DNA of 64,000 nucleotides from Mizuhopecten yessoensis. Taxonomy: Eukaryota. The notes under the pieces are model-generated. The model had not been told where the DNA came from. It saw only the letters and a list, made by a program, of their open reading frames with translations, and did not search any database. Below are positions 3,401 through 57,220 of the stretch, in pieces. Every line of letters begins with the position of its first letter. The first letter of the stretch is position 1. The position numbers and the translations under genes were made by a program. Location of the stretch: the NCBI RefSeq assembly GCF_002113885.1, contig NW_018403901.1:252755-316754 (forward strand), read 5' to 3'.

Positions 3401-5049
3401 AATCCCAACGGTTTACTGCCATAAACAACCGTAGTCCCCACGGTTTACTGACATAAACAACCATAGTCCCCGCGGTTTACTGTCATAAACAACAATAGTT
3501 CCCGCGGTTTACTGACATAAACAACCGTAGTCCCCACGGTTTAATGACATAAACAACCATAGTCCCAACGGTTTACTGAGATAAACAACCATAGTCCCAA
3601 CGGTTTACTGCCATAAACCACTGGGGAAGAAATAGAAACCATAGTCCCCGCGGTTTACTGTCCAAAACAACCATAGTCATCACTGTTTACTGACATTAAC
3701 AACAATAGTCCCCACGGTTTACTGACATAAACAACCGTAGTCCCCACGGTTTAATGACATAAACAACCATAGTCCCAACGGTTTACTGCCATAAACAACA
3801 ATAGTCCCTGCGGTTTACTGTCATAAACAACAATAGTCCCCGCGGTTTACTGACATAAACAACCGTAGTCCCCACGGTTTAATGACATAAACAACCATAG
3901 TCCCAACGGTTTACTGCCATAAACCACTGGGGAAGAAATAGAAACCATAGTCCCCGCGGTTTACTGTCCAAAACAACCATAGTCATCACTGTTTACTGAC
4001 ATTAACAACAATAGTCCCCACGGTTTACTGACATAAACAACCCCATAGTCATCACTGTTTACTGACATTAACAACAATAGTCCCCACGGTTTACTGACAT
4101 AAACACCCATAGTCCCAACGGTTTACCGACATAAACAACCGTAGTCCCCACGGTTTACTTACATAAACAACCATAGTCCCAACGGTTTACCGAAATAAAC
4201 AACCATAGTCCCTACGGTTTACTGATATAAACAACCATAGTCCCCACGGTTTACTGAAATAAACAACCATAGTCCCCACGGTTTACTGACATAAACACCC
4301 ATAGTCCCAACGGTTTACCGACATAAACAACCGTAGTCCCCACGGTTTAATGACATAAACAACCATAGTCCCAACGGTTTACTGCCATAAACAACCGTAG
4401 TCCCCCCGGTTTACTGACATAAACAACCATAGTCCCAACGGTTTACCGAAATAAACAACCATAGTCCCTACGGTTTACTGATATAAACAACCATAGTCCC
4501 CACGGTTTACTGAAATAAACAACCATAGTCCCCACGGTTTACTGACATAAACACCCATAGTCCCAACGGTTTACCGACATAAACAACCGTAGTCCCCACG
4601 GTTTACTAACATAAACAACCATAATCCCAACGGTTTACTGCCATAAACAACCGTAGTCCCCCCGGTTTACTGACATAAACAACCATAGTCCCCACGTTTT
4701 ACTGTCATAAGCAACCATAGTACCCACGGTTCACTGACATAAACAACCATTATAAGTCCCCTCGGTTTACTGTCCTAAACAACCATAGTCCCCGCGTTTT
4801 ACTGACATAAACAACCATAGTCCCAACAGTTTACTGACATAAACAACCGTAGTCCCCACGGTTTACTTACATAAACAACCATAGTCCCAACGGTTTACTG
4901 ACATAAACAACCATAGTCCCCACGGTTTACTGTCATAAGCAACCATAGTACCCACGGTTCACTGACATAAACAACCATTATAAGTCCCCGCGGTTTACTG
5001 TCCTAAACAACCATAGTCCCCGCGGTTTACTCTCATAAACGACCATAGT
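438..5049. repeat. Minisatellite, 32-bp unit (ggtttactgacataaacaaccatagtccccgc), ~140 copies, in an intron of gene A
   Basis: Directly visible 32-bp periodicity with variant units and higher-order block duplications. Confidence 0.97.
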
Positions 5050-20370: not shown

Positions 20371-20542
20371 AAACAACACCCTTCCCTATGTAAATAACAA
20401 CCGAATCAGGGAGAGGAGAAGAACAGGCAGACTCATGCACTGAAAACAACACCCTTCCCTATGTAAATAACAACCAAATCAGGGAGAGGAGAAGAACAGG
20501 CAGACGCATTCACTGAAAACAACACCCTTCCCTATGTAAATA
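20324..20542 (+). repeat. 73-bp triplication spanning the gene B stop codon
   Basis: Units start at 20324, 20397 and 20470 and are nearly identical. Confidence 0.95.
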
Positions 20543-21337
20543 GCAAGTGGATGCACCTCCATTTTTATCCGCTGTTTAATGTGAACTAAACATTTTCTGA
20601 TTTTTGTATTCAGAGCCTTGAAAGAATTATGATTTTATGAAATATTGCAGCAATCAGTTCAAAGCTAGACTTGAATTAATCGGTTTCAAAATGTGAGATG
20701 ATAGACAGAAAACAGGTTAACTTCTAGTTCGTGAGCTGCTCTATTTGAGGTTCCAAATTAATCCCTAAGCTTTCTTGCAGTGTCTTCCTTTCAGTCAATA
20801 CTGCATACTCGGATAATTACTATTGGCGTCGTGACAATCACTGTTCATAATCTTAAGTTTTGTATATTCAAATCATTCACAATCAATGTCTTTAAATCTG
20901 TGCCCAGTGTATCTAACTTCCCTTAGATATGACATGAGAAATATAATACAATTTATTTATCGTAATTATTATGTGTGTTTTGTCTTTTTCAATATTTAAT
21001 AAAGCATCTTTTCAGTACTATACTTATTCTTATGATTTTGACTTATGAAGAACGGGTAATCTAAAGACACAATATATACAATGTTCGTGTATATATGCTT
21101 TGCGAAATACATACACAGATGTAACAAAAAAGACAAATGGAATGGTTTGGCAGTATCGTTTATCTAGCGTTGGACATATTAAGTTTCTTTATTTAAATCA
21201 ATGTGTCATTATCGATACATGAATACAAAGTGTCAATGATAAATAGAAAATGTTTCAAGATGAACGTTTGACACGCGCAGGTTATCAAATCGTTAGCATT
21301 TGGTAATAAATACAGCATATCATATATGAATAACGCT

Positions 21338-25619: not shown

Positions 25620-28600
25620 ATGACAATGTGGACAGGGATTTCTTTATCCTGCTTCATCTTATGGATCCTTCGATCGGCACATTATGTTGGTGAGTATGAT
25701 TTTTTTATACACAAATATGTATACATTAAAAATCTTCTATCAAATTGTGTGTCCCCCATTTTTCCAATTTTCGCTTGTGAGTACATACTTGTTATCTCTG
25801 CATTTCCATCTAAAGACAATTGATTCCGGAATGTGTGTAGCACTGCATGACCGATTGTTATTTATTTGCACATATCCTAATACAACCAGACAGTAGTATT
25901 AATACTCATCACTCTCTTTCTCTGTCGACATGTTTCTACAATCAACCTTATATTCCACTCAATTCATTTCAAATGATACTAAACTAAGTTATAATGTCAT
26001 TCGCCGGGCACGTTACCCGGTATTCCTCATTGACGTGTGTAGTATGTCTATTGCACATTCAAACTACTAAAGAATAATACTTGATTGAGAAATGTTACCC
26101 TCCTTTTTCTAATATTTTATTACCTCCAGTAAAGGTTACCGTATCGGGAACTTAATAACGTTGCTGCCTAGTTAATCCTTAAACCGATCTTGTTTCCTGT
26201 CGTATGGTAATCACAAAACTGTATTGCTGTAGTAGGGCAATCATTGTATTCCTGTAGTAGGGCAAGCACTGTATTCCTGTAGTAGGGCAATCATTGAAAC
26301 ATGTTGAAGTAAGATGAGATATCCCTTATACAATATTATATATTACTTTGGCATGTTATGTTATTATAATTGATGTGTCCGTATTATATGCTTTTGAATG
26401 ATGTTTGAAGTTCATTAGTAAAGAGTCCAAAATAATAACCTTGTTTGCTTTGTTTGGCTTCCTGTATCTACGGCCATTCGGTAATATGTTGTCACATTTC
26501 CATTTAAAGTTAGCATCGCATTACTTTGCTGTTGGACACAGGTACTGAAATATTATTTTCAAAATAAACTATGTTATTTCGTTTATACTCAGACAACGGA
26601 AAATAGGAGATGCAGACTTTTTAGAGAGTAAAACATTTTTTTGCTTATTCCAATAAGTGTTGCAGAAAGGTACACTGTATCATAATATCAAATAAGCGTC
26701 ATGATGTATAATCAAAAGGTCATTGGATCGATTCTTCTTGTTTGTGAAAAGGAATTTTATTTTCGTTCTTAACTCTTTTCCGTTTTAAATGGACGAACAA
26801 CTCTAAGTTGGATAGTCATAAGGACAATTTTCTTTTGTTTGTTGGAGTTAAAAGCAGATAATATGTCTATCTGCCTTGTGTTTTTGTATTTCTATGTGAT
26901 CTTACCTAACGCTTATATTTAAATGTGTATTTTATGTTCGAACTTATGAGTATAATTAAACGAGATGTTTGTGTTTTTGTTGGTAGTCGGTTGGGCTATG
27001 CGTCTTTCTGAACAAGGTTAGGTAATAAATGCATTACTACCATGTACATATATGTACTTCAATTAAGTAAGATATTTTCATTGCGGTTTTTTCCAAAAAA
27101 AAACATCTGTTTGAGTTTGAATTGCATTCTCTCTCTTCTACCGGGTATTTATTAAATTAATGCGAATATCACTCATACATTTCATGCCCATACTACTCCT
27201 GGGAACTTATACTACCTATAGGCGATGTTATAACTTTAAATTGCATTAACGTACTGATAGCAATTTGAAGTCCAGTCTTCAACACATTTCGAATATGTAT
27301 ACTACATGGTACAAGGAAGTAGAGACATTAATGTATTTGTGTTGTATGAGTATGCTAGCAGGTCTAAATAATTACCATATGTATGAACAAATTGATGGAA
27401 GGTCTAAACATTTATTACATGTATGAATACTTTGATACTATTCCAATTCAAAAATTCAAAACATACTAATAAGTCATTTTTAATTCCTCTTATTGAACTC
27501 GGGAGGGGNTGTATTTCAATATATACTTTGAAACAGTCCTAAATGAACAAAACAGTTAACATATTTTCTTTGTTTGGCCTTCTTCGTCACCTTTCCTAAT
27601 TCGTAATGAATATCTTATTACTTTCCAAATTAGTAATGTATATAAAAAATGTATTTTTACATGAAGTTGTAGTGATATGTTTCTACCTAGTACAAGAGAT
27701 CTGTGCCGTTTCTATGAACAGTGAGAGGGTTTTAGAAAGATAAGATAATGCTCACAATGACATAAGTATAATGATACAATATCATAATTTCTTATATTTC
27801 GACCAAGACTGATCAACTGTGACCTCTCTCTGTATTCAGATAAGATAAGGTCAAATGGTACTACCCGTAAAGGTAGTCGACGACCCGAAATAAGTCGAGG
27901 TAGATCACAGGTGAATAAATCAGACTGTTGACCGCTAATCCGGTACAATAAAACCTCATTATTCTAAGCTTACCATGAAAGGCGTGTGTAATAATGTTTA
28001 TTCAAATAAACTGTATCAACACGTTAATCTTATCAGCATAATAAGCTTGCATATATTAGTTGATTATGTACACTTGTATATGTGATCTTACTATTAGACT
28101 ATGCACAATCATATTTGAAATGCCATGTTTAATCCGTTCTAAAGAAACCTATCCCTTACCAAACCCTCTAGTTTTTTATGAATAATATTGATACATATAC
28201 ACATTTTGAAATCCTTACGATATTTAATTTTTAATTTGTATATACGCGTGGAAGCCTATTGAACCATAAAATTTGCGTAGTATTTGTCTGTTTATCGTAA
28301 GTGTTCACTGCCAGTGATGATTTTCATTGATCACATCTCGTCAATTTATGTGTCACCTATATACCCCCTATAGGACATAAGAACGGCATACACTCAGTTG
28401 TATTCGTTACACATTATAACAAGACCGACAGAGGTGTTCTGCCATTTTATTAAATATAGTTATGTCTTGTTTTGTATCAATACATAACAACAAGATATAT
28501 AAGGATGTCATCTAACTGGACCTCCGGTACAACGAATCTCTAATCAAGCTAACCAAACGTACACACTTTACTCTTATAGGGTGGGCTACCAGTCAGAATA

Positions 28601-31600: not shown

Positions 31601-34600
31601 CATGTTGTCCTCATTAGGATTTTTCACGTGAGTAAATGTATTGTACGTCGATCAAAGCTCCACAGGAAAATCACAGGCTCTGACTAATTACCTTAACTTT
31701 GAATTATACACTCACTTTTACCAAAACGACATTAATGTTCCGTGTAATCAACATGGCTGACTGATTGAAATGTATGTCATATTTCCATCAGCTGTGACAA
31801 GTTGCGACCTTAACGGGTAGTATGATAAAGTGGGTTGATCTTGATTGTGCTGTATCAGGTCTTGCATTTATATCTTGACCTGCTCTAAATATATCACTTT
31901 CACCAACAACAAAGATATTACAATGATAACATCAACATGCTGAATTTATACACTACTTTTTTAGAACATAAGTGACTTAGCATTTTTTTGTAAAAAACAA
32001 CAATGGTTAATTGTTAATTTGTGCTATTGTAGAATGGTTTATTCGAAGATATATCGTATATAAACATATAACACGTGAGACATGTTATTCTTGAGTATGA
32101 TAAAAATAAATCCAGTTGGAGTTGTTAGCGGATATTCTGGAATTTTAAAAGGTGAAATTCCCTGTATTGCCATATTAAACAATAATATCTTTTACAAATA
32201 TCCAATTACCATGTTTATCAAAGGATGATATATGGTGCGCCCTCGTCGTCATTTATTGGCAATAATACCCTGTATTATATATAAATATATGAACTATAAA
32301 CGTGACATCTTTCACACCTCACTGGTGTTAATACTTATTAAGTGATTGCTTTTGAAAAATGAATTTGCCTACTATTGATTACTGTGTAATATATCTTGTT
32401 TAATAACCAATATAAATTCAAGCCGGTGAAAAATGCATGTTAATAGTTAAATTATATATGTAATAAGAAGCAAAATTTACGACGGAAACCAATTTCTGAC
32501 TCGTGTCCTGTCCTGCCTCGAACTCACGAACACCAGCACCAAATTACTTAACCAAGAAGCATCAGAATATTGCATCGTGCACGCCTCCTCAAAAATTGAT
32601 GTTTTTGATATTGTTATCATGGTCAACAGTCCGGTTATCTCGACATGATCATAGAAACTTAATTTGCATAAACATTAGATATTAGATGCGGTATAATGAC
32701 GACGGGCTGTTAGTATCTTTAACATTCATATCCTGTAACATGGAAAAACAACATACACTTTGTTTATACTTAACTTCTATATATCTTTAATGTTTTAGAG
32801 AGCACATGCTCACAACCATCCTCGGAATGGTCAGGCAACTGGTACGACAGTCAGTTTGATGGGACGTTTGGAATAACTTGGTCCAGTAATGTTATTACAA
32901 TAACAGGCTGGTCAGTCACGGCCTATTCGTCCACAGTGACCAGCTGGTCATGTGTGACAGAGGATACAACAAACAACTATATAGTGTTCCTGTAAGACGT
33001 TTAATGTTTTAATTTTAAATATGAATATAGATAACTTATAACTGTATTCCTCAATTCCTTCTAAAGAGTAATAAAGAAAATCAAGGATGGGTTGCTTAAA
33101 GGATCATCCTATATGCTATCCAAACAAAAGCTTTAATTTTCGTTCTCTGTTTCTCTCAACATTTAGACATTTCTCTTTGATTAAAGATTAATTGGAAATT
33201 GTCGATTGTATTTGATTAATCAGTAAATACCCTCCGGAAATTGTTTTAATTTTATGAATACTCAAACAGTATAAAAGACAACGAAAAAACGAAAACGTTT
33301 TACTTTGCTGATAATAGTAAATGTCATGGGAAGAACTCATACGGTGTGGAATGTCGTTTTTTCAAAAAGCAAATAAAATTTGATGAATTTGTACCTGGAT
33401 ATTACGGTGGATTAAAAATTGTGATAACGTAACTATCTAACAAATACCGTAAATGATTAATAGATGGTTTATTCCATTATAGGGGAGACCAGACAGTGAA
33501 CTTATTTGGACAGCCACAGAACGCCTATATATGCATGGCGTGGACCCAGGTCAGCACTTATTCTTATGTATACTACCTACAGGCAAGTAAGTAGCCAGTG
33601 CAACGGCATGTTTATATGTTAATTTCCATTGAAATTTAGTTCAACACATTGTTACAAATTTCGTTCTCATGTCAAACTAAAACAATGTTTTTGTTTTTCT
33701 TATTTAAAAACTAAACATTGTCAAAATTAATGCAACTAATTTCCCTTTTCAGTGATTTTTTATATGAGTGCTTTACAGTTTGCCTACCTCATACTTTTAA
33801 CAGGATATCCACCATGCTATGCGTTGTATACTTGATGCGAGAATCAGATAATCTGATAGGTAGAGGCGATTGTTTTCTCGTATTTTCACTTCGGCATTCA
33901 ACACAGTGTCAATGGGAAATCTATTAATAAGGAGTGATAGTGTAAAACTTAACCGATGAGAGTGTAAACTATAAATGAGTGACAGTACAATTTAGCCAAT
34001 GCCAATGTAAAATATAAGTGGGTGTAATTTACCAATAGCTGACAACAAGAAAATCAAAAGATGACAGTGTAAAATATAAAGGGAATGCAGTTTAAAACTT
34101 CAATCGGTCAATTCGTACATATTCATATTGTATCCATTACTAAATAGTTATGTATTTATCTTATTATCTCACATCAGCTGCACGAGGTCTAGAAATGAAC
34201 AGTACTGTACATTTATTTTTTATGGTCACATATTGTCTAAAAAAAAGGTTCTAACGCTAACTATGCTACCCATTTCCAATGATTAATTATTGACTGTAAG
34301 CAAAATCTTTATAATTATAATATCAATCCATTATGTCCATATATCTACATTGTACCACCAATGGAGAGGACTCGAATAGGCTATAGGCCTGTTGTTCAGT
34401 CCATTTGGCAGTGTAATATTCTTCTTTGTCGATCAAATATGTTGAAATTGAACTGGTGAAAGTGCAAAATAGCAACTGGTGACCATGCACAATATTTATT
34501 CTTAATGAATGTGGGGCAAGTCTGCATGTACGTATGATTGTTTCCACAATGTCATCCTTTTACCAAAGGTATAATACATTTTGCAAACATGTTTAATATA

Positions 34601-37600
34601 AAACACCCGTTGTTACCTTGGACAATGCTTTGCATCGAAGCTATCATTATCTTTATATATAACTTTGTAGATACGGAGGCCAATGCGGGAGAATTCCGTG
34701 TTTTTATAGAGGAATCGACCATCGCAACGGGGGCGGCCAGCAAATACTGTGCTCCTACCTCCGGTCCGTCCACAGCTGAATACCACACCCTAGTCAAGCA
34801 AAGTAGGACAACCGGCTCTTAACATCAGTATTTACTTGTTATAAAATAAAAATGAAAACATTTTCAATTACTGATCAAATATGGTAGCGCTTCTGAGGTT
34901 GTTACTTTTTAATACACATGATATTAATATTCAATCATTTTTCTATATATAGACGTGATACTTTATGAGTTATGATTGGTAAATACTATTATTACTACAT
35001 AAGGACATACAATGTAGTATCAGTCAACATGTAAAAATCGTAGTAGTTTTCCGTTTCAGCTAGGTGGTTATGTAATAGTTGAACCTAAGGTCTCGTATTG
35101 ATATCATGCCGTTATAATTTTGTTTCATAGGTCACATAACGAGTGTAGGGCAGTACTTTCCAACTCTCCTGCTGGGCACGTACGAATATACAGCTAATGA
35201 TGGCTCTAGTTCTCTATGCGGAACCGGAAGTGTGTGGGATAACTGTAATGACAGAACCATTACAGCCTTCAACTACACCCAGTGTGCAACTGTAATGGCA
35301 TATTCAAGTAAGATATTTCCTTGATTGTTAGTGAACTTTTAACAGGAAACAACAGTCATGAGACTAGAGAATATGCGTATAGTTTGCAATGCAGTATGAT
35401 TAAAAGAATACCTAACAACACCATCGTACAGTCATACGTGTTGCGTTAGAAACCTCTATGATAAAACCGGTGCCCATAGAATGAAGTAGATTCCTGTGTT
35501 GAGTACACTATATACTGTTATGTGATAGTTGAAAAAATAACCTTTAGTGTTTCACTTTTGTCCAACAGGTGGTGGTACTTTGTACAACGTATACTCAGTC
35601 GTCAGTGGATCGTACACTTACGTCACCCTGGTCAACGCAGACGCAACGACTGACGAATCAACTACTTACAGATTTACATGTTTGGTACGTTATATTTAAC
35701 TACCTATTAAACATGATTAATATAAGTGTATGTCCAACCTATCCATGTTTCATTGTGTTGCTTGCCAAGTGTCATTACCCCATTACAAGGACGAGACGGC
35801 AACCTGTTTCTGGTCTTTTTAATATTCTACTGCTTTGTGTTGTATTTAATTTATTTATTTATAAAACAAATCGTGCTTATTAAATATACTCATGTTTGAA
35901 GTTTAAATTTTAATTAAGGTGTTATACTTAATTGTCTTTGTAAAGATACTATTGTATAAGTAATGCTTTTGGCATTATATTTGCAAATCATAATTCGACA
36001 ACACAGAAAGCATACACACCAAGTATTTACATCGAATTTTAAGGTAACATTAACAATAATAATCACATGCTCATAATATTCTGTTACAGATTTGTCAGGC
36101 CTCTGGTTCGAATGTCCAGTTAAGCATTGACCACGGTAGCTGTAGCACTTCGGGCAATCCCTCTACTGTCCCCGCTGGAGGAATGACTGCAACGCTGACC
36201 CCCTATGGTATGTACTGCAGTCTATTGACTTAACATAGAGTATTACTTTTTTGAATAAATCTTTCATAAGTGCGTTAGAAGTAACTCATTTGTTGATTTT
36301 ACATAGATTATCATCTAAGCACCAATCGATGCCGTGACAAAATATATAATTGAAAAGAAAACGATGAAAAACAAATCTGTTTTTATTCCTTTTGGTAGTA
36401 TGTTTTATAACTACCTGGTTTTCTAATAATTTGTTACATTTTATCAAGTGTATGACATCAACGCTTTAATAATATATTGTTTTTCTTTATGTGTGCCTTC
36501 CTTGTCGGGATAAACAGTTACCTGCCGTAAGTATATATTTCTCAATTCAGATAAACTATTTCTTAAGTACATGTTTCACTGGCATCGAGTTATTGACGTC
36601 TTTTTTATCTTAATTTCGTACTTAGTTATTCGCTTTTCTAAAGTATCATATATATCGAATCAATGACGTGCTTCGATTTTTAATTTCCTGATAAATTATT
36701 CGCTTGTGATTTAACCTATTATTAGATTAATAGGACATGAATGAAGTATTGTTAAGTATGAAACCGGTTCAATTGTCTAACTAGTAACATCACTTCTCCT
36801 CCAAGGGATACATGCCGTTAAGGCTATCTCCAACTGGCATAGCTTCATCAATGGTTATCGTAAAAAGAATTATATGTTTGATTTCTTTGGCAATAATTAC
36901 CATTTATCACTAATTAAGATTGAAGTCGACTTTCCCGTTCATTCTGGATTGTATTTTTTGCTATTCCACAGCGTTCACAACGACCAGTGCTACGACAACA
37001 TGTAGGGAGCATTTGTTGTTTTATTATCACTTTTTGGGGGTTTTCTGTTTTGCATGTGCTTGATTTGTATACCACTTTTAACAAAACTTGTGTTTGATCT
37101 CACAACTTAATATCACATCTTCTATACCACTCCCAAGTCCCTACCAATACATGGACTGAAAGTTGCATGTTTAACTGTGAATTGCACTGAATCAATTATT
37201 TAACCATACGCGTACCAATGGGAACACATGCAAGCTTGCATTAATTTCTCGACGTTTAAATCACTTGTTGTCCCTGGTTACTCTCTAAAATAAATGGTTT
37301 GTTATGTTTCGGTTTTTCGAAGTATATCTTGAAATTGTGTAAGTCGGGTTAATATGAGCGAGTCTAACTCATTCCATCGTATCGTGTTTCTCGAGTCACA
37401 GGGGATTTTCAGTATCACATTTGTATGCCAACACAAATATACTCTGACCGACTCCCTCGCCATCTACATTTCCAGTCAAACGATAGCCTGGTAATACTTG
37501 GCATGTCTTTTATATCCTACTTTTTCCTTGTTTGCTTACCTTTTTGGAGACTGATACTATTTGTTTTATCAGCATAATTCCTATATTCACTTGGTTGTTG

Positions 37601-40600
37601 TAAATTGCCTCACCTAAATAATATCATATATGGTACCCCCCTGATGGGGAGATGTTTTGTTTTTGTTTTCGTCAATATCAATCTTTTCCGCCTCACAAAT
37701 TGCACATTCCCCAGCTCTCTCTCTCTACTATCTGTATATCTTACTCGTTTAAACGCTGACTAATGAGATGGTGTTGATTTCCATTGTTATTCCAATACTC
37801 GCGATGTTCTTAATTTCAATAAATATTGAATGAAAGTTATAAATGATTATATTGCACGATTATATACATTCGATTTTTAACTGAATCATTTACATTCTAT
37901 GTATGGATGTATTTTCTGTAATTTGTCTATTTACCGCTATTTACGCTATTTACCTGAGCGGTGGCGACATCAATATATGTTGCGCTATGTACATATGTTT
38001 GCTGTATTGTAGAATTAGTTTATTGATCGAGTCCAGTGTGTCTTTTTGTTCAATTGGCACGAATTCATGTTAAAACTATTTTGACGGTATCCTAGTTCAG
38101 TTAACTTGGTGATTGTCAATCGTGTCCTCTAGACGATTAATTATCCACATATCAAAGCCATTATAATTATTCAATATACGCATTTTTATTTGTTTTTATT
38201 TTACTCGTTTGTTGTTTTACAGCCTTAAAAACGACCATAAGGGCTAGTGTATTAAGCAGATTTGTTGGTATAGGGATTGTTAAGTACTTTTGTTTCAGTG
38301 ATTCACTACAACGGATGTCTCCCCTCTTCTAATCCGCATGTAATCGAACTGCACACATCAGTTTATCTTATAGAAAGCAGTAATATTAATTTGATAATAA
38401 TTGAAGATATGAACTCAATATGTGTCATTAATACATAATCAGTGCAACGGGATTTGTTCGCCATTCGAATGCTGGAGAATAAATATTGGAATTAATCAAT
38501 TGATTGATTGCCACTTTATAAATATTCTCTGCTGTGGAGGATCATCCGTTTACTCTGTGCGATTTGTTGTTTCACAGCGTTAGCAACGACGACCAATACG
38601 GGTAACACTTTACTATTAGATGTGTTGAGACAAAGGTTTCATTTCCTCCGATTCTATTTTCCTTATTTTCTTTATATATATATTTTTTTAATATTTTTTC
38701 CTCTGATTATACCAACCCAAGTAATGTATCCTTTCCAAGTTGTAACCATTATTTCAGTTACCTGTACATTGTCATCCCTTACGTTCAGGAATATTCTGTT
38801 GAAACAAAATGTAAGCCATATAATGCATTGTTAAGCATGCATGGATGGCTGTAGATAGTTGATTTACTCGCATGTATAACTTGAATTACATAATTGTATT
38901 ACTAACCCCCTAGTCTAACATACTTGCGATTTCATTTAAGAGTAGCGTCGTTTGGTTATTGCTAGCAACATGATGCCATTTATTCATTACACGTTATGAA
39001 ACTATAGAACTGATCCATCCATTATATATATATGATTATTTGGTGATATTAAGGGATATATAAGAGAAGAGTATAACGTTGAAAATAAAAGACATAAAGT
39101 GTTTAAATACAACCCTTAACAAAATCAAGTCTATGCTATAATTCTCAACCCAGATAAACTATTTCTTAAGTACATGTTTCACAGCCATCAAGTTATTGAC
39201 GTCCTTTTTAACCTAATTTCGTACTTAGTTATTCGCTTTTATAAAGTATCATATAAATCGAATCAATGACGTGCTTCGATTTTTGATTTCATGATAAGTT
39301 ATACGCTTGTGATTTAACCTATTATTAGATTAATATGACATGAATGAAGTATTGTTAAGTATGAAACCGGTTCGATTGTCTATCTAGTAACATCACTTCT
39401 CCTTACGCGCTATCACGTGATACATGCCGTTAAGTCTGTCTCCAACTGTAATAGCTTCATCAATGAGTATCTTAAAAAGAATTATATGTTTGTTTTCTTC
39501 GGCATTAACTACCATTTATCACTAATTAAGATTGAAGTCGACTTTCCCGTTCATTCTGGATTGTATTTTTTGCTATTCCACAGCGTCCGCAGCGGCCAGT
39601 GCTACATCATGTAGGGAGCATTTGTTGTTTTACTATCACCTTTCGGGTTTTTTCTGTTTTGCGTGTGCTTGATTTGTATACCACTTTTAACCAAACGTAT
39701 GTTTGATCTCACAACTCCATATCACATCTTCATAACCACTCCCAAGTCCCTACCCAAACATGGACTGAAAGTTGCAAGTTTAACTGTGATTTGCACTGAA
39801 TCAATTATTCGACCATACGCGTACCAATGGGAACGCATGTAAACTTGCATTTATTTCTCGACATTTAAATAACTTGTTGTCCCAGGTTACTCCCTGAAAT
39901 AAATGGTTTGTTATGTTTCCGTTTTTAGAAGTATATCTTGAAATTGTTTACGTCGGGTTTATATGAGTGAGTCTAACTCATTCCATCGCATCATGTTTCT
40001 CGAGTCACAGGTGATTTTCAGTATCATATATGTATGCCAACATAAATATACTCTGACAGACTCCCTCGCCATCTACATTTCCAGTCAAACGATAGCCTGG
40101 TAATACTGATCCCAAGTCTTTTTATTACTGTAGGAAAATACTAGGCATGTCTTTTATATCCTACTTTTCCCTTGTTTGCTTACCTTTTTAAACACTGATT
40201 ATATTTGTTTAATCAGCATAATTCCTATATCCACTTGGTTGTGGTAAATTACCTCACTTAAATAATATCATATATGGTGCCCCCTAATGTGGTGTTTTTT
40301 TGTTTTTATTTTCGTCACTATCAATCTTTTCTGCCTCACAAATTGCACATTCCCCAGCTCTCTCTCTACTATCTGTATATCTTACTCGTTTAAACGCTGA
40401 CTAATGAGATGGTGTTGATTTCCATTGTTATTCCAATACTCGTGAAGTTCTTAATTTCAAATAATATTGAAACGAAGTTATAAATGATTATATTGCACAA
40501 TTATATACATTCGATTTTTAACTGAATCATTTACATTCTATGTATGGATGTATTTTCTGTAATTTGTTTATTTACCGCTATTTACCGCTATTTACCTGAG

Positions 40601-43600
40601 CGGTGGCGACATCAATATATGTTGCGCTTTGTACATATGTTTGCTGTATTGTAGAATTAGTTTATTTCATTTGGCACGAATTCATGTTAAAACTATGTTT
40701 GCGGTATCCTAGTGCAGTTAACTTGGTGATTGTCAATTGTGTCCTCTGGACGATTAATTATCCACATATCAAAGCCATTATAATTATTCAATATACGCAT
40801 TTTTATTTGTTTTTATTTTACTCGTTTGTTGTTTTACAGCCACAAAAACGACCATAAGGGCTAGTGTATTAAGCATATTTGTTGGTATAGGGATTGTTAA
40901 GTACTTTTGTTTCAGTGATTCACTACAACGGATGTCTCCCCTCTTCTAATCCGCATGTAATCGAACTGCACACATCAGTTTATCTTATAGAAAGCAGTAA
41001 TATTAATTTGATAATAATTGAAGATATGAACTCAATATGTGTCATTAATACATAATCAGTGCAACGGGATTTGTTCGCCATTCGAATGCTGGAGAATAAA
41101 TATTGGAATTAATCAATTGATTGATTGCCACTTTATAAATATTCTCTGCTGTGGAGGATCATCCGTTTACTCTGTGCGATTTGTTGTTTCATAGCGTTGG
41201 CAATGACGACCAATACGGGTAACACTTTACTATTAGTTGTGTTGAGACAAAGGTTTCATTTCCTCCGATTCTATTTTCCTTATATTCTTTATATATATAT
41301 AGAATAAAAACAAATTTTCAGATCCTCCCTTAGGCTTTTCTGCCTTCTAGGGCTTCTTCAGGCGGATTGTATGTATTATATATTTTTTCCTCTGATTATA
41401 CCAATCCAAGGAATGCATCCTTTCCTAGTTGTAACCATTATTTCAGTTACTTGTTCATTGTTATCCCTTACGTTCAGGAATATTGAAAAAAATGTAAGCC
41501 ATATAATGCATTGTTAAGCATACATGGATGGCTGTAGATAGTTGATTTACATTTTACTCGCATGTATAACTTGAATCACATAATTGTATTGCTAATCCCC
41601 TAGTCTCATTGTTTTACAGCCTTAAAAACGACCATAAGATGTAAAATTTTATTTTTATATTTAGATAATATCCAAACAGTGATTATTTAAAATGATATAT
41701 ATATATATTAAAATGATATATATATATATATATATAGCAGGGCGACTTTATTCTACTAGGTTCAGCAAGTGACTTCTTTTTGAAAGAAGAACAGTATATT
41801 TCTCAAATTTTATTACTCTCGAAACATAAACATTATTTTGCGAGCTTGCTTTTCTCTGTAATAAATGCGGACCTTTAATTTTTTCAAATTCATAGAAATT
41901 ACAATGTATTACGAAACGCAAAATTTAAAGTCTAACGCCCAAATCGGATTTTGACATCACACAAATGGTATTTCTCGACACTGTCCAAATGTCTTCTATT
42001 GTCTTCTGGTTTGGGGTCAAAGTTGTTTATAGATAATAATAACAGCCAAAAAAACGTAATTAGATTATGTATGCTCATTTGATTGGTTTCAGGACCTTCT
42101 TCACACATTTCACTATGACGTACGTTTATTCAGCAACGACTTTGCTTTTTTGCCTTACCATGATATAGTAGTCATATCTAGAACATTTTGAGGAGAGGAA
42201 AGAATGCTATTTGTTTTAATAAATTGTTTGATACTTTGCCATGATATTCCTAACATTACAGGGAAATACTTTATATAAGCACAAACGAGCTCATATTTGT
42301 ACAGCGTTAAAAACTCCAACGGTTATGATTTAATGAAAAGATGTAAAGATATAATAGAAATGATATTGAAATGAGTAACCTTTATTTGATTTGCTGTCAA
42401 CCTTATAACAGAAGCATTTTGTACTTGTCTAAATTTTAGCTACAACTGAAACCAGTAGCGGTGGTATTGGACTTTATATCGGAGCCGCCATCGGAGGGTT
42501 GCTTTTTATCCTCATCATCATCGGCGTTATCATCATCTGTCTTAAACTCAAGAAAAAGAAAAATGTTGTACAGGACGAAGAAAAGAAGCAGGCGCCTCCT
42601 CAAGGTAAAGTCTTTTTCTCTGGATTTATTGTTGTTTCTGGAATATTGAATAAATCTACAGGACGTCCCACCTTAAAGGTGCCATCTTATCATATAATAA
42701 TACTTCATCCTATTATGGCATCTGCATACCACTAAAGTCGTTCCGAATAGCACGATTGCCTCCATTACATAAAAAGAGTATTACACTTTATATTAAGTAT
42801 TGTGAAGCTCACGCACATTTGAAGGCCTTACGATACCCTCCCTCCAGCAAGTAGACGCATTTTCAGAAAGTCTTTCTAATCCTTCCTTTCAAATTTTTAT
42901 ATCATATTTATATATCATCTTGTATCAATGACATTGTTTTTGAGGACTTTAAATAAACATTCATCCTTTGTGTATATTTAGTTCGTGTATTTCGAAAAGA
43001 CATTTTTGATATTCGAAGATTTCCAGGTAAGATCACCGCTAATGCATGACTCACTTCGGTAACCGGTTTGGTTAAATGACTGCCAGTCACATCAATCAAT
43101 GACAATGATTGTATGGCGTAGGTTTATGCATGTTAGTTTATAATTTTGTATACATTTGAAAGGTCAAGGTGAAGGAAAAGACAACAGGGACGCTTATTTG
43201 TTTCCAGTCATATTGTCGGTCACTGGTTGCAGTGAATTTATTTCATTGTAAATTAACGTTCAGAAGTAATTCGTGAGATCAGCCATAATGTAGCTCTTCT
43301 TTATATATAAAGGTATGGAAAGCGTTTGCTTATTTTAAGCTTCTTAATTACTTTTTATTGTTGATGACAAATAATTCCTCTGTACATATATGTTATATGA
43401 TTCCTTAGAGATCGAGTGATGTGCTATTGCTTATCACAAAAACGTCCTCAGATTAGTACTAATTAATGCGTCTCTTAAAATCATTGATAATGTAATAATT
43501 GATCTCCAACACATTTACAAAATTCATGTCGTTTTACATTTTCTATCGTATTTGTAATGTGTATATTCATTCCTTATTCAGAATTATGCTAGGTACTTAC

Positions 43601-46600
43601 TATCATGACTATCATCCATCTTTTTTCAGGGAAATATTTACCACCCATTAATGGAGGTAAACTATGTATTAAGTAGAATATACTATATCTATACATAGAT
43701 ATTTTTTCTCATTTAACGCATGTTCATCAGGTTTCTTCTATTCATTTGTTGGCTTCTTTTAACCATTTAAACGAAATGCATGTTGTTTGAAGAGAAGCAA
43801 TGCTCTTTTCAGATCCGGCAATATCAGCATTTTGTCACAATGCATGTTAATTATGTATCACAAAATCTCAGCTCTTTCACATGCATTTTCAAAAGCGATA
43901 TATGCCATTAATATTTGCAGATAGTCAAAAGATGCTAAAATACGTGTAATGGGTTGCTTATGCGTGTAAAATGTAGCTTATATCATATGCTGCAGCTTAA
44001 CATGCATGCAATAATAAGCCGAATTATTCCATGTGAAAGCTAAGCATAGAGGTAGGAAACGACTGTTATGATATACTTAAGTATTGGTTTTCGCCCTGGA
44101 TGGACACTTTCTGATACAAATTTAGGCCTGATTTAGGACAGAGGTAGTATAATCATTAAAGCAGTTCTCAGTGAGGCAAATAGGAAAAGAAAGGAAATTT
44201 TTTTGTAAGCAAATATGAAAACGATATATATTTCTAGTAAGAAATGATATTCACACAGCCTCAATCATTATTATTACAAATATGTTATAGTTGATATCAT
44301 TGAAGTCTATCAATTTCCTGATATTTGACAACTGAATGTCTAGTTTCAACGACACAGCGACATCATGAATATGACTAGGGTGTTTAGGCCTTAATGCTTG
44401 GATACTTTCATTGCAATTTGCATCTCGTTATGAGTGTTATATTCACTTTGTTATTGGGGAGCGATTAACAGACTCTGACAACATATATTCTTGATTGGAA
44501 TAAGTATGAAATGTTCTTAGATTAGATTAGCCTATGTCTTTTTCATTATTCTGTGTATAGTATATATCGTAGAGCGTGATCTGAATATTATTCTCTCATC
44601 GTTGTACAATACTCGAACAGTGACCTTGGAATATCATTATAAATAAAGATACTATTTCATCATAGTTTACTTTATATGACAAAAAACAGTTTTGTAATGG
44701 AAACGATTACAAAAATGTTTTCGTTTATCAATTAACAAACTTGCCAACCAATGTGTTGGAATCATATTTCATTTAATTGTGTTTAACATCTAACATGTAA
44801 CATGTTCGAGTAGTGTACATGTATGACTCAACAGCATATGGTAACAAAATCATATGAACTATTACATCTGAATCGAACCACTTAAAGATACAAGAGAATA
44901 GTGTTCCAATGTATTTGAATTATCAAATACATAGTTCGGTATCACCGGAGTTTACCTATATCATATGCCTATGACTTATACTCAAAAATGTGTTTCCCCA
45001 TATACAAAAAGGAACTCATTTTATGATTAATTAACATTAATTTGTTCATTTATGTGACGGCTCTGTCTTTCATTTTCTTTCATTTTCATACCCCTTGGAT
45101 ATGATTTTTGTAAGTATGGTTCAACACACTAGAAGTCCCTTTAAGATACTTTAAATAAAAACATACCATACCCGAGGGAATTGCTGTGTTGTACTCCAAC
45201 CCAAATAACATGTTTTCACCTTAGTAGGCCAAACCGAAAACTATTCAATCTTACATAGTACGCTATATTGATTCTGTTTGTATTGTTGTGTATAGTTTTG
45301 ATTCTTATTGTAAATGTATTTAAAACGTTTATTTCATCAACAATCAATTGCAAGGTCGTATTATATTGAACGCTTGAAGAGGCAAACACTAATTTAACAA
45401 TCAGTTTCTAAACTACATGCCATGGTACATGGCACGAACTTTTAGATTTGCAATGAGGCGGTCTAACTTTAATTCCTATACAACAAAGTGTACACAGGGC
45501 CAATTAAGCTCCGCGGTCAAAGAAAATAGTCAAGTACTTGATTTATCAATAAAGGTGGAAGTCGTTGATGACAAGCTTTTGTCATTATGTGGCTAGCACT
45601 GTCGTACTTTGTTTACCCTTGGTAACACACACACCACGAGTACCTGTTAAGTAGGGGGCAGGCAAGGGCACTCGAGGTGTGGCAAGGGCCCACAAGTCAT
45701 CATTACACCGTGTCGCAATAGCTTCAGTTATCTTACAGCTTGGCAACTATGTTAAAAAAACTTAACAGTGTGTGGTTTGTTGTACTTTTGTTATTAGTTA
45801 AGGTTCAAAATGTAAGCAAAGTTTGATTGTTCCTCGCTATAGTTCAATATAGGAACCTGTGCAGCATCAGACTGTTTTATACCAAACGATCTTTTGCGCT
45901 ATTCTTCTTTGCGCTTTCACTATCATTAAGCAGTTTCTTCAGAAAAAAAGAACAAACTTTTCCATTTTCAAGTAAATCTGTACGTTAGCAACTTTTACAA
46001 TATATATTTTATATCGGGTTATAGGGTTTCTGAGAGATGTAGTTAGGTAGCGTTGATATCACAGTACATTTAATGTATATATAAGATAAATGCCTGGGGT
46101 TATATGGTGTCTAAAAGAGGTAATTAGGTAGCGTTGATACTACAGAACATTTAAGGTATACATAAGAGAAGTGCCTTGGGTTATACGGGTGTCTAAGAGA
46201 GGTAGTTAGGTAGCGTTGATACCACAGTACATTTAATGTATATATAGTATAAGTGCCTATGGTTATACGATTTCTAAGCGATGTAGTTAGGTAGCGTTGA
46301 TATACCACAGTACATTTAATGTATATATAGTATAAGTGCCTAGGGTTATACGGTGCCTAAGAGAGGTAGTTAGGTAGCGTTTACCACAGTACATTTAATG
46401 TATATATAGTATAAGTGCCTGGGGTTATACGGTGACTAAGAGAGGAAGTTAGGTAGAGTTAATACCACAGTACATTAACTGGATATAGTATAAGTACCTG
46501 GGGTTATACGGTGTCTAAGAGAGGTAGTTAGGTAGAGTTGATACTACAGTACATTTAATGTATATATAGTAAAAGTACCTGGGGTTATACGGTGTCTAAG

Positions 46601-49600
46601 AGAGGTAGTTAGGGAGAGTTGATACTACAGTACATTTAATGTATATATAGAATATGTACCTGGGGTTATACGGGTGTCTAAGAGAGGTAGTTAGGTAGAG
46701 TTGATACCACAGTACATTAACTGGATATAATATAAATACCTGGGTTATACGGTGTCTAAGAGAGGTAGTAAGGTAGAGTTGATACCACAGTGCATTTAAT
46801 GTTTATATAGAATATGTACCTGGGGTTATACGGTGTCTAAGAGAGGTAGTTAGGTAGAGTTGATACTACAGTACATTTACTATATGTATAGTGTAAGTAC
46901 CTGGGGTTATACGGTGTCTAAGAGAGGTAGTTAGGTAGAGTTGATACCACAGTACATTAACTGGATATAATATAAATACCTGGGTTATACGGTTTCTAAG
47001 AGAGGTAGTTAGGTAGAGTTGATACTACAGTACATTTAATGTATATATAGTAAAAGTGCCTGGGCTTATACGGTGTCTAAGAGAGGTAGTTAGGTAGTGT
47101 TGATACTACAGTACATTTAATGTATATATAGTAAAAGTGCCTGGGGTTATACGGTGTCTAAGAGAGGTAGTTAGGTAGAGTTGATACTACAGTACATTTA
47201 CTATATATATAGTATAAGTACCTGGGGTTATACGGGTGTCTATGAGAGGTAGTTAGGTAGAGTTGATACTACAGTACATTTAATGCATACATAAGATAAG
47301 TATCTGGGGTTATACGGTGTCTAAGAGAGGTAGTTAGGTAGCGTTGATACCACAGTACATTTACTATATATATAGTAAAAGTACCTGGGGTTATACGGTG
47401 TCTAAGAGAGGTAGTTAGCTAGAGTTGATACTACCGTACATTTACTATATATATATTAAATGTACTGTGGTTTCAACGCTACCTAACGACCTCTCTTAGA
47501 CACGGTATAACCCCAGGTACATATTCTATATATACATTAAATGTACCGTAGTATCAACACTACCTATCTACCTCTCTTAGACGCCGTATAACCCCAGGAA
47601 CTTATACTATATATACATTAAATGTACCGTAGTATCAACACTACCTATCTACCTCTCTTAGACACCGTATACCCCCAGGTACTTTTACTATATATATAGT
47701 ATAAGTTCCTGGGGTTATACGGTGTCTAAGAGAGGTAGTTAGGTAGAGTTGATACCACAGTACATTTAATGTTTATATAGTATAAGTACCTGAGGTTGTA
47801 CGGTGTCTAAGAGAGGTAGTTAGGTAGAGTTGATACTACAGTACATTTACTATATATATAGTATAAGTACCTGGGGTTATACGGTGTCTAAGAGAGGTAG
47901 TTAGGTAGCGTTGATACCACAGTACATTTAATGTTTATATAGTATAAGTACCTGAGGTTGTACGGTGTCTAAGAGAGGTAGTTAGGTAGCGTTGATACTA
48001 CAGTACATTTAATGTATACGAAAATCGACTCTATGCAAACCCTAGACATCTACATGTCAGTGAAACACAGATTAATATCAAGTCTCTTTCCTAATCCATT
48101 TGAAGGACATTTCCTTCCACGGTTATAATTACTGAGGATAAATATTAACGTTAGTAGATCGTTGTGATGTTGCTTTATAAAATACTTTTGAAATTCGAGA
48201 AGGTCATATTTTTTTCATTTTGTCCATTTGCTTTTGAATTTGTCATTTGTATTGGATTTTTGTACAATGCCCAATTTGCCTACTTTCTATATTTTAATTT
48301 ATGGCAGTGCTTTGCCTGTTGAGTCATGTTTTTACTTGTCGGCTTGAACACTCTATGCATTAACGTAAAATGATATTACATTCTAAACATAACATATACG
48401 AACAGGCTTGTCTATTATTACAGTCATGTTCTCTCATGATGTTAGCATACTTTCTGCCAATATTGAACCATTTTTTTTAATTTCATTTCTCTGTTTCGAA
48501 ACGTCGATGTAACGTTGGTCAGAGGCATTGTTAATTTCAATGGACAAATTGATCTTTGAAATGGTGTCATTAGCAAACCGGAAAACTTCCAGACTATTGA
48601 TATTAACACAGACAGTGGAATAAATCATCAGTGGATAATGACTATACGTTACATCTCCTTTTAACAATATATTGTACATCAATACACACGTCATTAACGA
48701 GGGAGGGTTTGGTAACGCCTGGCTCCACAGAGGAGTAGTAATCTCCTGGTACAACAATGTACCAATGGACTAGTATATGACGATGATAATACGTATTGGA
48801 GAAATATAGAAATCACAAGCCAATTACTGTCATTGTTATAACGTCGCACGTTTACATGGTATTGATTTAACCGAGTCTTTGATCAAACCAGGTAATAAAT
48901 ACTACGGCATATATCATTACCAGTCAATCAGACCCTTTAAAATGATACCCAAAATATATAATTTAACATCCAATATCCTGAACTGGATAAATAAGTCTAT
49001 GTTTAACCCATACTTTCCTGTATGCGTCTGTATATTGGTATATATTGTTCCTACCTTAAAAGCATTTACTGTTAATGTGTGACCTACTTCTGTACTTACC
49101 CTTGACTGAATAACAACATCCATATTTTTTCCTCTTTTCATTTTGTAATTCTGTCTTTCTACCTCATCATTGCCAACCTAAATTACGACAAATTTTATGA
49201 AATTATCTTTATTACATTTTGATACCTACCCAAGTTTATTCCGGGTAAAACAAGAAACCAATCTCATTTAATGATAAACAGATGTAAAGATCACTTATTT
49301 TATATGTTTTTTACGATGAAAATATATCTAAGTTACTGAGCACCACTGTGTTCATATCGTCACCAATTTCAATTGCTAGCACATCAATCAGAATGAATCA
49401 ATGTCTATACTGTAACCAACATATTATCTTTGAAGAATTAGCGATTATCATAAGGAATATTGGCGATGTGAAATATTTGAAAGCTTCACTCATTACCACG
49501 AAATTTGAATATTGTAAGTTATATTTCTTACAGAATGTGTTATAGAAACGATGTCCCCGCGAGATGCCCTCGAGATTGGATCACCTGACATTGACAACCG

Positions 49601-49691
49601 ACTAACACCTTTACCGGTACAGCCTATCGCCCCAGTGACAGCACCACAAACGGACAAACATCCTCTTCCGCCCATCACAAACAATGGCTGA
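25620..49691 (+). CDS. Gene C: paralogue of gene B, type-I membrane protein (up to ~480 aa) with a microexon-encoded Thr/Ser stalk and Pro-rich cytoplasmic tail. Exons 25620-25689, 32799-32991, 33483-33586, 34671-34802, 35131-35307, 35569-35684, 36090-36207, 36518-36526, stalk microexons (36972-37001, 38223-38246?, 38578-38601, 39584-39610, 40840-40863?, 41195-41218, 41620-41640), 42440-42604, 43630-43656, 49534-49691
   Basis: Signal peptide MTMWTGISLSCFILWILRSAHYVES; ectodomain TCSQPSSEWSGNWYDS...LFGQPQNAYIC...YVTLVNAD...YRFTCL aligns exon by exon with gene B, same phases; TM IGLYIGAAIGGLLFILIIIGVIIICL then KLKKKK; tail GKYLPPING...HPLPPITNNG*; AATAAA near 50602 and 50865. Confidence 0.85.
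30860..31330. repeat. Degenerate ~30-33-bp tandem repeat
   Basis: Recurring aagttaactatcaatacatactacctata-like units. Confidence 0.7.
36518..36526 (+). CDS. 9-nt microexon of gene C (V-T-C)
   Basis: aaacag|ttacctgcc|gtaagt; same size, phase, position and Cys as gene B 19948-19956. Confidence 0.75.
36539..41606 (+). repeat. Intragenic direct duplication: ~36539-38916 and ~39142-41606
   Basis: Long near-identical blocks (e.g. cagataaactatttcttaagtacatgtttcac at 36548 and 39151; near-duplicate ORFs at 38508 and 41125) separated by ~225 bp of unique spacer. Confidence 0.95.
36972..41640 (+). CDS. Array of 21-30-nt phase-1 Thr/Ser/Ala-rich stalk microexons of gene C
   Basis: Each follows a strong acceptor (ttccacag, ttttacag, tttcacag/tttcatag); peptides FTTTSATTT, LKTTIRA, LATTTNT, SAAASATS, TKTTIRA, LAMTTNT, LKTTIR. 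The donors of 38223-38246 and 40840-40863 (gtgtat) are weak. Confidence 0.6.
41322..41367 (-). ncRNA. Degenerate hammerhead ribozyme-like motif inside a ~75-85-bp segment unique to duplication copy 2
   Basis: - strand: atccgc CTGAAGA agccct aga aggca GAAA agcc ta agggaggat; atcc/ggat can close stem I. Confidence 0.45.
42440..42604 (+). CDS. Transmembrane exon of gene C
   Basis: aaattttag|...caag|gtaaag, 165 nt, phase 1-1; hydrophobic helix followed by a poly-Lys stop-transfer segment. Confidence 0.88.
46015..48018. repeat. Minisatellite, ~81-bp unit, ~25 copies, with three units inverted; in the last intron of gene C
   Basis: Unit ggggttatacggtgtctaagagaggtagttaggtagagttgatactacagtacatttaatgtatatatagtataagtacct (starts 46581 and 46662); reverse-complement units at ~47450-47693. 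Confidence 0.96.
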
Positions 49692-55664: not shown

Positions 55665-57220
55665 AATCTAGCCCTCACATCATCTTTCTTTTATATCATC
55701 TACCCCGCAGTTAATCTAGCCCTCATATCACCCAAATGTCATACCATCTAACCATTATATCACCAACCCTCATATCACCCAAATGTCTTACCATCTAGCC
55801 ATTACATCACCTAACACTCATATCACCTAAATGTCATACCATCTAACCATTATATCACCTAACCCTCATATCACCCAAATGTCTTACCATCTAACCATTA
55901 CATCACCTAACACTCATATCACCTAAATGTCATACCATCTAACCATTATATCACCGAACCCTCATATCACCTAAATGTAATACCATCTAACCATAACATC
56001 ATCTAACCCTCATATCACCTAAATGTCATACCATCTAATCATTATATCACCTAACCCTCATATCACCCAAATGTCATACCATCTAACCATTATATCATCT
56101 AACCCTCATATCACCCAAATGTCATACCATCTAACCATTATATCACCTAACCCTCATATCACCCAAATGTCATACCATCTAACCATTATATCATCTAACC
56201 CTCATATCACCCAAATGTCATACCATCTAACCATTATATCACCTAACACTCATACCACCCAAATGTCATACCATCTAACCTTTTTATCACCTAACCCTCA
56301 TATCACCCAAATGTCATACCATCTAACCATAATATCATCTAACCCTCATATCACCCAAATGTCATACCATCTAACCATTATATCACCTAACCCTCATATC
56401 ACCCAAATGTCAAACCATCTAACAATAATATCATCTAACCCTCATATCACCCAAATGTCATACCATCTAATCATTATATCATCTAACCCTCATATCACCC
56501 AAATGTCATACCATCTAACCATTATATCATCTAACCCTCATATTACCCAAATGTCATACCATCTAACCATTATATCAGCTAACCCTCATATCACCCAAAT
56601 GTCATACCATCTAACCATTATATCTCCTAACCCTCATATCACCCAAATGTCATACCATCTAACCATAATATCATCTAACCCTCATATCACCTAAATGTCA
56701 TACCATCTAACCATTATATCATCTAACCCTCATATTACCCAAATGTCATACCATCTAACCATTATATCAGCTAACCCTCATACCACCCAAATGTCATACC
56801 ATCTAACCATTATATCACCTAACCCTCATATCACCTAAATGTAATACCATCTAACAATAACATCATCTAACCCTCATATCACCTAAATGTCATACCATCT
56901 AATCATTATATCATCTAACCCTCATATCAACCAAATGTCATACCATCTAACCACTATATCATCTAACCCTCATATCTCCCAAATGTCATACCATCTAACC
57001 AGTATATCACCTAACCCTCATATCACCTAAATGTCATACCATCTAATCATTATATCACCTAACCCTCATATCACCCAAATGTCATACCAACTAACCATAA
57101 TATCATCTAACCCTCATATCACCTAAATGTCATACCATCTAACCATAATATCATCTAACCCTCATATCACCCAAATGTCATACCATCTAATCATTATATC
57201 ATCTAACCCTCATATCATCT
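55665..57220. repeat. Minisatellite, 48-bp unit made of three diverged 16-mers, ~31 copies
   Basis: aaccctcatatcacct / aaatgtcataccatct / aaccattatatcacct repeated; explains the 16-aa-periodic ORF 56023-56694. Confidence 0.96.

What the first reader, a model, noticed from the sequence alone, without database searches (positions are those of the whole stretch)
36972..42604. Combinatorial microexon cassette building a length-tunable mucin stalk in gene C
Seen in sequence: between the ectodomain and the TM exon lie up to seven microexons of 30, 24, 24, 27, 24, 24 and 21 nt. All are multiples of 3, phase 1-1 and Thr/Ser/Ala-rich. Each one, and the TM exon, begins with C (cg, cc, cg, cg, cc, cg, cc, ct), so any junction codon is NCN (Ser/Pro/Thr/Ala) and never a stop. 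Any subset therefore splices in frame and stays mucin-like. Full inclusion reads PFTTTSATTT-SLKTTIRA-TLATTTNT-ASAAASATS-STKTTIRA-TLAMTTNT-ALKTTIR-STTETSSGG. Established knowledge: this resembles schistosome micro-exon genes and variable-stalk receptors such as CD44, CD45 and CD46. Inference: alternative splicing tunes receptor height and O-glycan load. Paralogue B has no such cassette.
Basis: partly seen in the sequence, partly recalled or inferred. Interest (0 to 1): 0.85.

Follow-up and report, generated by a model that had tools for sequence, protein, structure and literature searches.

The report
Scallop receptor with variable sugar stalk
A scallop cell-surface protein of unknown function changes the length of its sugar-coated stalk by including or skipping tiny exons, much as human CD46 does, but only three of the seven proposed tiny exons are shown to be used.

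Summary
The seven short phase-1 segments are there as described, and all 128 subsets are stop-free. The gene is Mizuhopecten yessoensis LOC110457484, a type I membrane protein with a DUF7042 double beta-barrel ectodomain. Alternative splicing of the stalk is real. RefSeq isoforms use six subsets of m1, m3 and m4, and a public-run contig splices m0-m3-TM. Pecten, Argopecten and Ylistrum each have three orthologous or equivalent stalk exons, all starting with C, with skipping seen in Pecten models and Argopecten transcript contigs. The seven-exon version is not supported. m4-m6 are copies of m1-m3 from a 2.6-kb tandem duplication not seen in the other scallops. m2, m5, m6 and m7 are in no isoform; m2, m5 and m7 lack orthologues and have donors weaker than all 52 reference donors. 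Shown range: 17-36 stalk residues, not up to 67. The layout (skippable Ser/Thr exons before the TM, plus alternative tails) matches CD46; it is not a schistosome-type micro-exon gene. Function of the length change is inferred, not shown. Read depth was too low to exclude rare use of the extra four. The scan's other notes on this concern the same DNA only.

The parts
25620..25689 (+). E1, start codon and signal peptide
   Evidence: matches N-terminus of RefSeq isoforms
32799..32991 (+). E2, ectodomain barrel 1
33483..33586 (+). E3, ectodomain
34671..34802 (+). E4, ectodomain
35131..35307 (+). E5, ectodomain barrel 2 (DUF7042)
35569..35684 (+). E6, ectodomain (DUF7042)
36090..36207 (+). E7, last ectodomain exon
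   Evidence: loose end of the X1 contig reads E7 then m0
36518..36526 (+). m0, 9-nt Cys-bearing microexon, present in all 10 annotated proteins
   Evidence: conserved in three other scallops and a mussel homologue
36972..37001 (+). m1, 30-nt stalk exon, shown to be alternatively spliced; orthologous in four scallops
38223..38246 (+). m2, 24-nt candidate; weak cryptic donor, no orthologue, in no isoform: probable pseudoexon
38578..38601 (+). m3, 24-nt stalk exon, shown to be alternatively spliced; orthologous in four scallops
   Evidence: joint to the TM exon, contig depth 40.6
39584..39610 (+). m4, 27-nt duplicate of m1, shown to be alternatively spliced; five non-synonymous changes (three Thr to Ala) and a 3-nt deletion
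40840..40863 (+). m5, duplicate of m2, same weak donor: probable pseudoexon
41195..41218 (+). m6, duplicate of m3 with the same donor; acceptor TAG here, CAG in run X1; use not shown, plausible minor exon
41620..41640 (+). m7, 21-nt candidate sharing 30 identical bases with m2; weak donor; use not shown
42440..42604 (+). TM exon: short constant stalk, transmembrane helix, basic stop-transfer stretch
42982..43026 (+). c0, 45-nt cytoplasmic exon; alternatively used in Pecten models, not annotated in this species
43630..43656 (+). c1, 27-nt alternatively spliced cytoplasmic exon
49534..49691 (+). last coding exon, with a second acceptor 12 nt inside
36534..38916 (+). copy 1 of the 2.6-kb tandem duplication (carries m1-m3)
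39137..41606 (+). copy 2 of the duplication (carries m4-m6); 5.8% substitutions overall

Best explanation
Gene C is a single-pass receptor-like glycoprotein: signal peptide, two predicted beta-barrels (DUF7042 family), a Cys microexon, a Ser/Thr stalk, one TM helix and a Pro-rich tail. Shown: three symmetric phase-1 microexons (m1, m3, m4) with weak-to-middling donors are skipped in different combinations, giving stalks of 17-36 residues with 9-22 Ser/Thr. The tail is varied separately. Shown by comparison: scallops share a three-exon cassette (A, B, C). This species kept A and B, has no recognisable C, and regained a third exon through a 2.6-kb tandem duplication. m2, m5, m7 and m8 are decaying relatives and m6 is a spare copy. 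Inferred: the Ser/Thr residues are O-glycosylated and the stalk is extended, so splicing sets how far the ectodomain stands from the membrane (about 4-9 nm at 0.25 nm per residue, a textbook figure from my own knowledge), and with it ligand access or protease shedding, as in CD46.
For: Ten annotated proteins show six stalk subsets built only from m1, m3 and m4. Contig length 591,364 ties them to this scaffold. An X1 contig joins E7-m0-m3-TM by a GT..AG joint. Pecten has 30/27/18-nt exons in five subsets. Argopecten-matching transcript contigs have 30/27/48-nt exons, the 48-nt one skipped in 2 of 5, plus a NAGNAG shift. Intron flanks of m0, m1 and m3 align across four genera. Donor scores: m1/m4 5.3, m3/m6 4.4, m7 2.1, m2/m5 2.0, m8 -0.1, against a leave-one-out minimum of 3.6 and median 8.1 for 52 reference donors. 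Fold: pLDDT 83, lipocalin-like barrels, DUF7042 cluster TM 0.86.
Against: RefSeq isoforms are predictions chained from reads; I could not see their read support. Raw RNA runs gave only 2-7 reads, so there are no isoform frequencies and no tissue pattern. Absence of m2, m5, m6 and m7 from annotation is weak negative evidence, as microexons are often missed. The donor matrix is small and built from related genes. No evidence on glycosylation, ligand or function.
Confidence: 0.7

Rival explanations
1. All seven segments are working exons, giving a large combinatorial ladder (up to 128 subsets, 9-67 residues), with the extra four used in tissues or stages not sampled.
For: All seven keep AG/GT, a pyrimidine tract, 3n length and an open frame. 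m6 has the same donor as m3. m2 and m7 share 30 identical bases amid unrelated flanks, which could be constraint.
Against: None of 10 annotated proteins, nor the listed X1 joints, holds m2, m5, m6 or m7. Donors of m2, m5 and m7 score below all 52 references. No orthologues in three other scallops. The identity between m2 and m7 stops just before the m7 donor.
Confidence: 0.1
2. The skipping is real but functionally neutral: weak-donor exons in a tolerant spacer are born by duplication, splice leakily because they keep the frame, and decay.
For: Fast turnover: exon C is 18, 48 and about 45-51 nt in three species and unrecognisable here; exon B peptides differ widely; relics m2, m5, m7 and m8 exist; m4 lost most of its Thr. 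Oyster and mussel homologues manage with a short stalk and have single annotated isoforms.
Against: A three-exon cassette, with 3n lengths, C-starts, Thr-rich content, weak donors and conserved intron flanks, is kept in four scallop genera. The m1 peptide is identical in Pecten, with differences inside the exon at synonymous or junction positions.
Confidence: 0.17
3. The second set of exons is an assembly artefact (two haplotypes placed in tandem).
For: The assembly is fragmented (82,659 contigs). One X1 contig runs from the end of copy 2 back to the end of copy 1.
Against: The copies differ by 5.8% plus 13 gap blocks. Annotated isoforms hold m1 and m4 in one chain. Six large runs of two studies hold 0.86-0.90 of the words of the whole stretch. 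The X1 back-joint rests on 33 shared bases and may be a graph artefact.
Confidence: 0.03

Closest known systems
CD46 (membrane cofactor protein) STP-A/B/C exons and CYT-1/CYT-2 tails
   Same: Type I membrane protein with three skippable Ser/Thr-rich exons between ectodomain and TM helix, plus alternative cytoplasmic exons, and only a few subsets in common use (PMC2118878, PMC5064401). Exon choice there depends on 5' splice-site pairing with U1 (PMC5064401).
   Different: No homology: CD46 has four SCR domains, this protein has DUF7042 barrels. STP-B is 15 residues against 6-16 here. No complement function is implied.
Schistosome micro-exon genes (MEGs)
   Same: Symmetric exons of 36 nt or less that can be dropped in frame; signal peptide; exon duplication (PMC8293314).
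   Different: MEGs consist mainly of microexons and are reported only from schistosomes (PMC8293314). Here the shown cassette gives 27 of 449 residues and the rest is a folded ectodomain on ordinary exons.
DUF7042/DUF7043/DUF7044 proteins of molluscs and arthropods
   Same: PF23069 above its cut-off; Atlas clusters match by structure (TM 0.86) and features (0.93).
   Different: The oyster and mussel homologues seen have short stalks. In a mussel the m1-like peptide opens the TM exon; in an oyster it sits in one 33-nt exon together with the Cys. The multi-exon cassette was seen only in scallops.
APCDD1 and other lipocalin-like beta-barrels
   Same: Barrel 2 aligns with APCDD1 at Z 6.3, rmsd 4.0, 119 residues; both are single-pass proteins with two barrels (own knowledge).
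   Different: The match is tied with many unrelated barrels (best Z 8.9), and Foldseek gave nothing at E <= 0.001. It shows no function.

Membership tests
Variable-stalk type I glycoproteins (CD46-like architecture) | Signal peptide, folded ectodomain, one TM helix | tested here: met
   read from sequence and model
Variable-stalk type I glycoproteins (CD46-like architecture) | Ser/Thr-rich juxtamembrane exons alternatively spliced in frame | tested here: met
   for m1, m3, m4 and their orthologues
Variable-stalk type I glycoproteins (CD46-like architecture) | Alternative cytoplasmic tails | tested here: met
   c1 skipping and a 12-nt acceptor shift here, c0 in Pecten
Variable-stalk type I glycoproteins (CD46-like architecture) | Stalk is O-glycosylated and isoforms differ in function | not testable with these tools
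   needs glycoproteomics and binding or shedding assays
CD46 / regulators of complement activation family | SCR (Sushi) domains | tested here: not met
   Pfam scan finds DUF7042 only
Schistosome micro-exon genes | Coding sequence made mainly of symmetric exons of 36 nt or less | tested here: not met
   27 of 449 residues in the shown cassette, 58 of 481 even with all seven
Schistosome micro-exon genes | Microexons symmetric and skippable in frame | tested here: met
Schistosome micro-exon genes | Raised dN/dS | tested here: inconclusive
   m1 vs m4: 5 of 27 sites changed, all non-synonymous; P 0.016 against the whole-intron rate, 0.07 against the local rate; other pairs not significant
DUF7042 (PF23069) | Score above the Pfam gathering cut-off | tested here: met
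   37.8 bits against 27 for P0062
APCDD1 family | Specific structural or sequence match | tested here: inconclusive
   Z 6.3, rank 19 among unrelated barrels

The most novel reading that the evidence does not exclude
A scallop receptor whose stalk cassette is under regulated, adaptive splicing and is still expanding: the duplication added working exons (m4 certainly, m6 and m7 as tissue-restricted ones), and m4 was selected to lose O-glycan sites, so that length and glycan density are tuned separately.
Probability: 0.15. Interest if true: 0.6.

Novelty: new member of a known kind. Interest (0 to 1): 0.35.

Why it matters
It is a clear invertebrate case of an independently evolved CD46-like layout in a protein family with no known function. 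No paper in the library names DUF7042 or this locus, though the isoforms are already in RefSeq. The four-species comparison shows stalk microexons being born and lost. A specialist would find it neat but not surprising; it does not open a long-standing question unless regulated inclusion and a ligand are found.

Tried and rejected
Raw RNA runs X22-X24 gave 2-7 reads each, too few for junction counts; read laying was held to 5,901 nt, so E7 and m0 lay outside the reference. A search with the stalk part for short transcript-derived proteins found nothing. m2, m7 and the 220-nt spacer as dispersed repeats: rejected, they match only this locus. m7 or m2 as the orthologue of exon C: local scores lie within the shuffled range. 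Foldseek against PDB: no match at E <= 0.001. Paper searches for the locus, DUF7042 and scallop microexons found nothing relevant; the original MEG paper was not held. The spliced model was searched exon by exon by reference, and the joined model was sent to no search tool; full-length queries were database proteins given by id.

Full report
Observation. The seven segments exist at the coordinates given in the parts list. Each lies between AG and GT, is a multiple of three, enters and leaves in phase 1, and starts with C. All junction codons are Pro, Ser, Thr or Ala, and none of the 128 subsets creates a stop. A scan for such segments finds 6 in the interval against 0.19 expected. They are not seven independent objects. 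A tandem duplication, 36534-38916 against 39137-41606, with 5.8% substitutions, makes m4, m5 and m6 copies of m1, m2 and m3. An eighth, frame-shifting relic lies at 42305-42321.

The gene. A search with exon 2 alone led to full-length relatives and to Mizuhopecten yessoensis LOC110457484, whose scaffold length of 591,364 equals that of this window's contig. The protein has a signal peptide, an ectodomain of about 290 residues, one TM helix and a Pro-rich tail. It scores above the cut-off for DUF7042. The model (pLDDT 83) is mostly beta strand. Its second half resembles many lipocalin-like barrels about equally, APCDD1 among them, so the fold does not give a function. The Atlas places it with mollusc and arthropod DUF7042-7044 proteins.

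Which segments are exons. Ten annotated proteins of this gene all contain m0 and use six stalk subsets: m1+m3+m4, m1+m4, m1+m3, m3+m4, m1 alone and m3 alone. None has m2, m5, m6 or m7, and none skips all three. An assembled contig from public run X1, guessed to be RNA, reads E7-m0-m3-TM with a GT..AG joint at depth 40.6. The three raw RNA runs gave only 2-7 reads. The tail also varies, through exon c1, a 12-nt acceptor shift and, in Pecten, a 45-nt exon that is intact here at 42982-43026. Against 52 donors from this gene and its homologues, m1, m3, m4 and m6 fall in the lower fifth, like the cassette donors of other scallops, while m2, m5, m7 and m8 fall below all of them. The matrix is small, so this is supporting evidence only. 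m6 has the same donor as m3 and may be a minor exon.

Other species. Pecten maximus has stalk exons of 30, 27 and 18 nt in five annotated subsets. Five transcript contigs that map exactly onto the Argopecten irradians locus show 30, 27 and 48 nt, with the last skipped in two and a three-base acceptor shift in one. Ylistrum balloti has 30, 24 and about 45-51 nt. All begin with C. m1 and m3 are the orthologues of the first two, with aligned intron flanks. The third exon has no detectable counterpart here, and m2, m5 and m7 have none there. The oyster and mussel homologues seen have short stalks and single annotated forms or no TM part. In a mussel the m1-like peptide begins the TM exon, and in an oyster it is one 33-nt exon that includes the Cys. 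I infer that the cassette grew from the 5' end of the TM exon and expanded in scallops, which also explains the shared first base. Orthology of the oyster and mussel genes was not tested.

Mechanism. Shown: in-frame skipping of m1, m3 and m4 gives 17-36 residues between the Cys and the membrane-proximal Gly-Gly, with 9-22 Ser/Thr. Inferred: these residues carry O-glycans and form an extended spacer of roughly 4-9 nm (0.25 nm per residue, from my own knowledge), which sets the reach of the ectodomain or its exposure to shedding. m4 differs from m1 at 5 of 27 sites, all changing the amino acid and three of them Thr to Ala; with Pecten as outgroup these changes fall on m4. The excess over intron divergence is marginal (P 0.016 overall, 0.07 locally). 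Neutral leaky splicing in a tolerant spacer remains a serious rival.

Comparison. The layout matches CD46: three skippable STP exons, alternative tails, and few subsets in common use (PMC2118878, PMC5064401). There is no homology to it. It fails the main criterion for schistosome micro-exon genes, which consist mainly of microexons (PMC8293314).

Limits. The spliced model was searched exon by exon and the joined step was left out; full-length queries were database proteins by id. Reads were laid on 5,901 nt only. 

Verdict. A real three-exon variable stalk, conserved in scallops and already visible in public annotation, with four extra look-alikes whose use is unshown and, for three of them, unlikely. 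New member of a known kind; interest 0.35.

Noticed in passing
window 38260-38574 against 40877-41191: A run of 315 identical bases inside the duplication; the 5' half of the unit differs by about 8% and the 3' half by about 3%, which suggests gene conversion or unequal crossing-over.
   Followed up: partly
window 41488 joined to 38806, run X1: One contig goes from the end of copy 2 back to the end of copy 1: a third copy, a recombinant allele, or a graph artefact, as 33 bases fit either side.
   Followed up: no
window 41192: The m6 acceptor reads TAG in the assembly and CAG in run X1, so m6 strength may be polymorphic.
   Followed up: no
window 41331-41372: A short insertion found only in copy 2 draws very deep contigs with loose ends, so it is probably a piece of a dispersed repeat.
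   Followed up: no
window 15612-20370 (gene B); L009 420-7282; L014 1-5501: The upstream paralogue has a 9-nt Cys exon at 19948-19956 but no cassette; a DUF7042 gene also lies just upstream in Argopecten and Pecten, so the pair is syntenic.
   Followed up: partly
G000:C2206:812730-858100; protein P0002: A relative with two copies of this ectodomain; the Pecten protein has about eleven EGF repeats between them. Further paralogues lie on C5592, C5593 and C574 near 340-345 kb.
   Followed up: partly
window 5873-6320, minus strand: A long Thr/Pro/Lys-rich tandem-repeat reading frame, a mucin-like stalk encoded in one large exon of a neighbouring gene.
   Followed up: no
window 20320-20546: A 73-nt unit repeated three times covers the end of gene B's TM exon and its stop codon.
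   Followed up: no
L010 5818-5841 and about 3875-3884: The Ylistrum RefSeq model omits the conserved 9-nt exon and the 24-nt exon B, both intact in the genome; probably annotation misses.
   Followed up: partly
window 442-5049, 46016-48018, 55714-57217: Large tandem arrays with periods of 32, 81 and 48 nt; the 81-nt array lies in the last intron of gene C and contains an inverted block.
   Followed up: no
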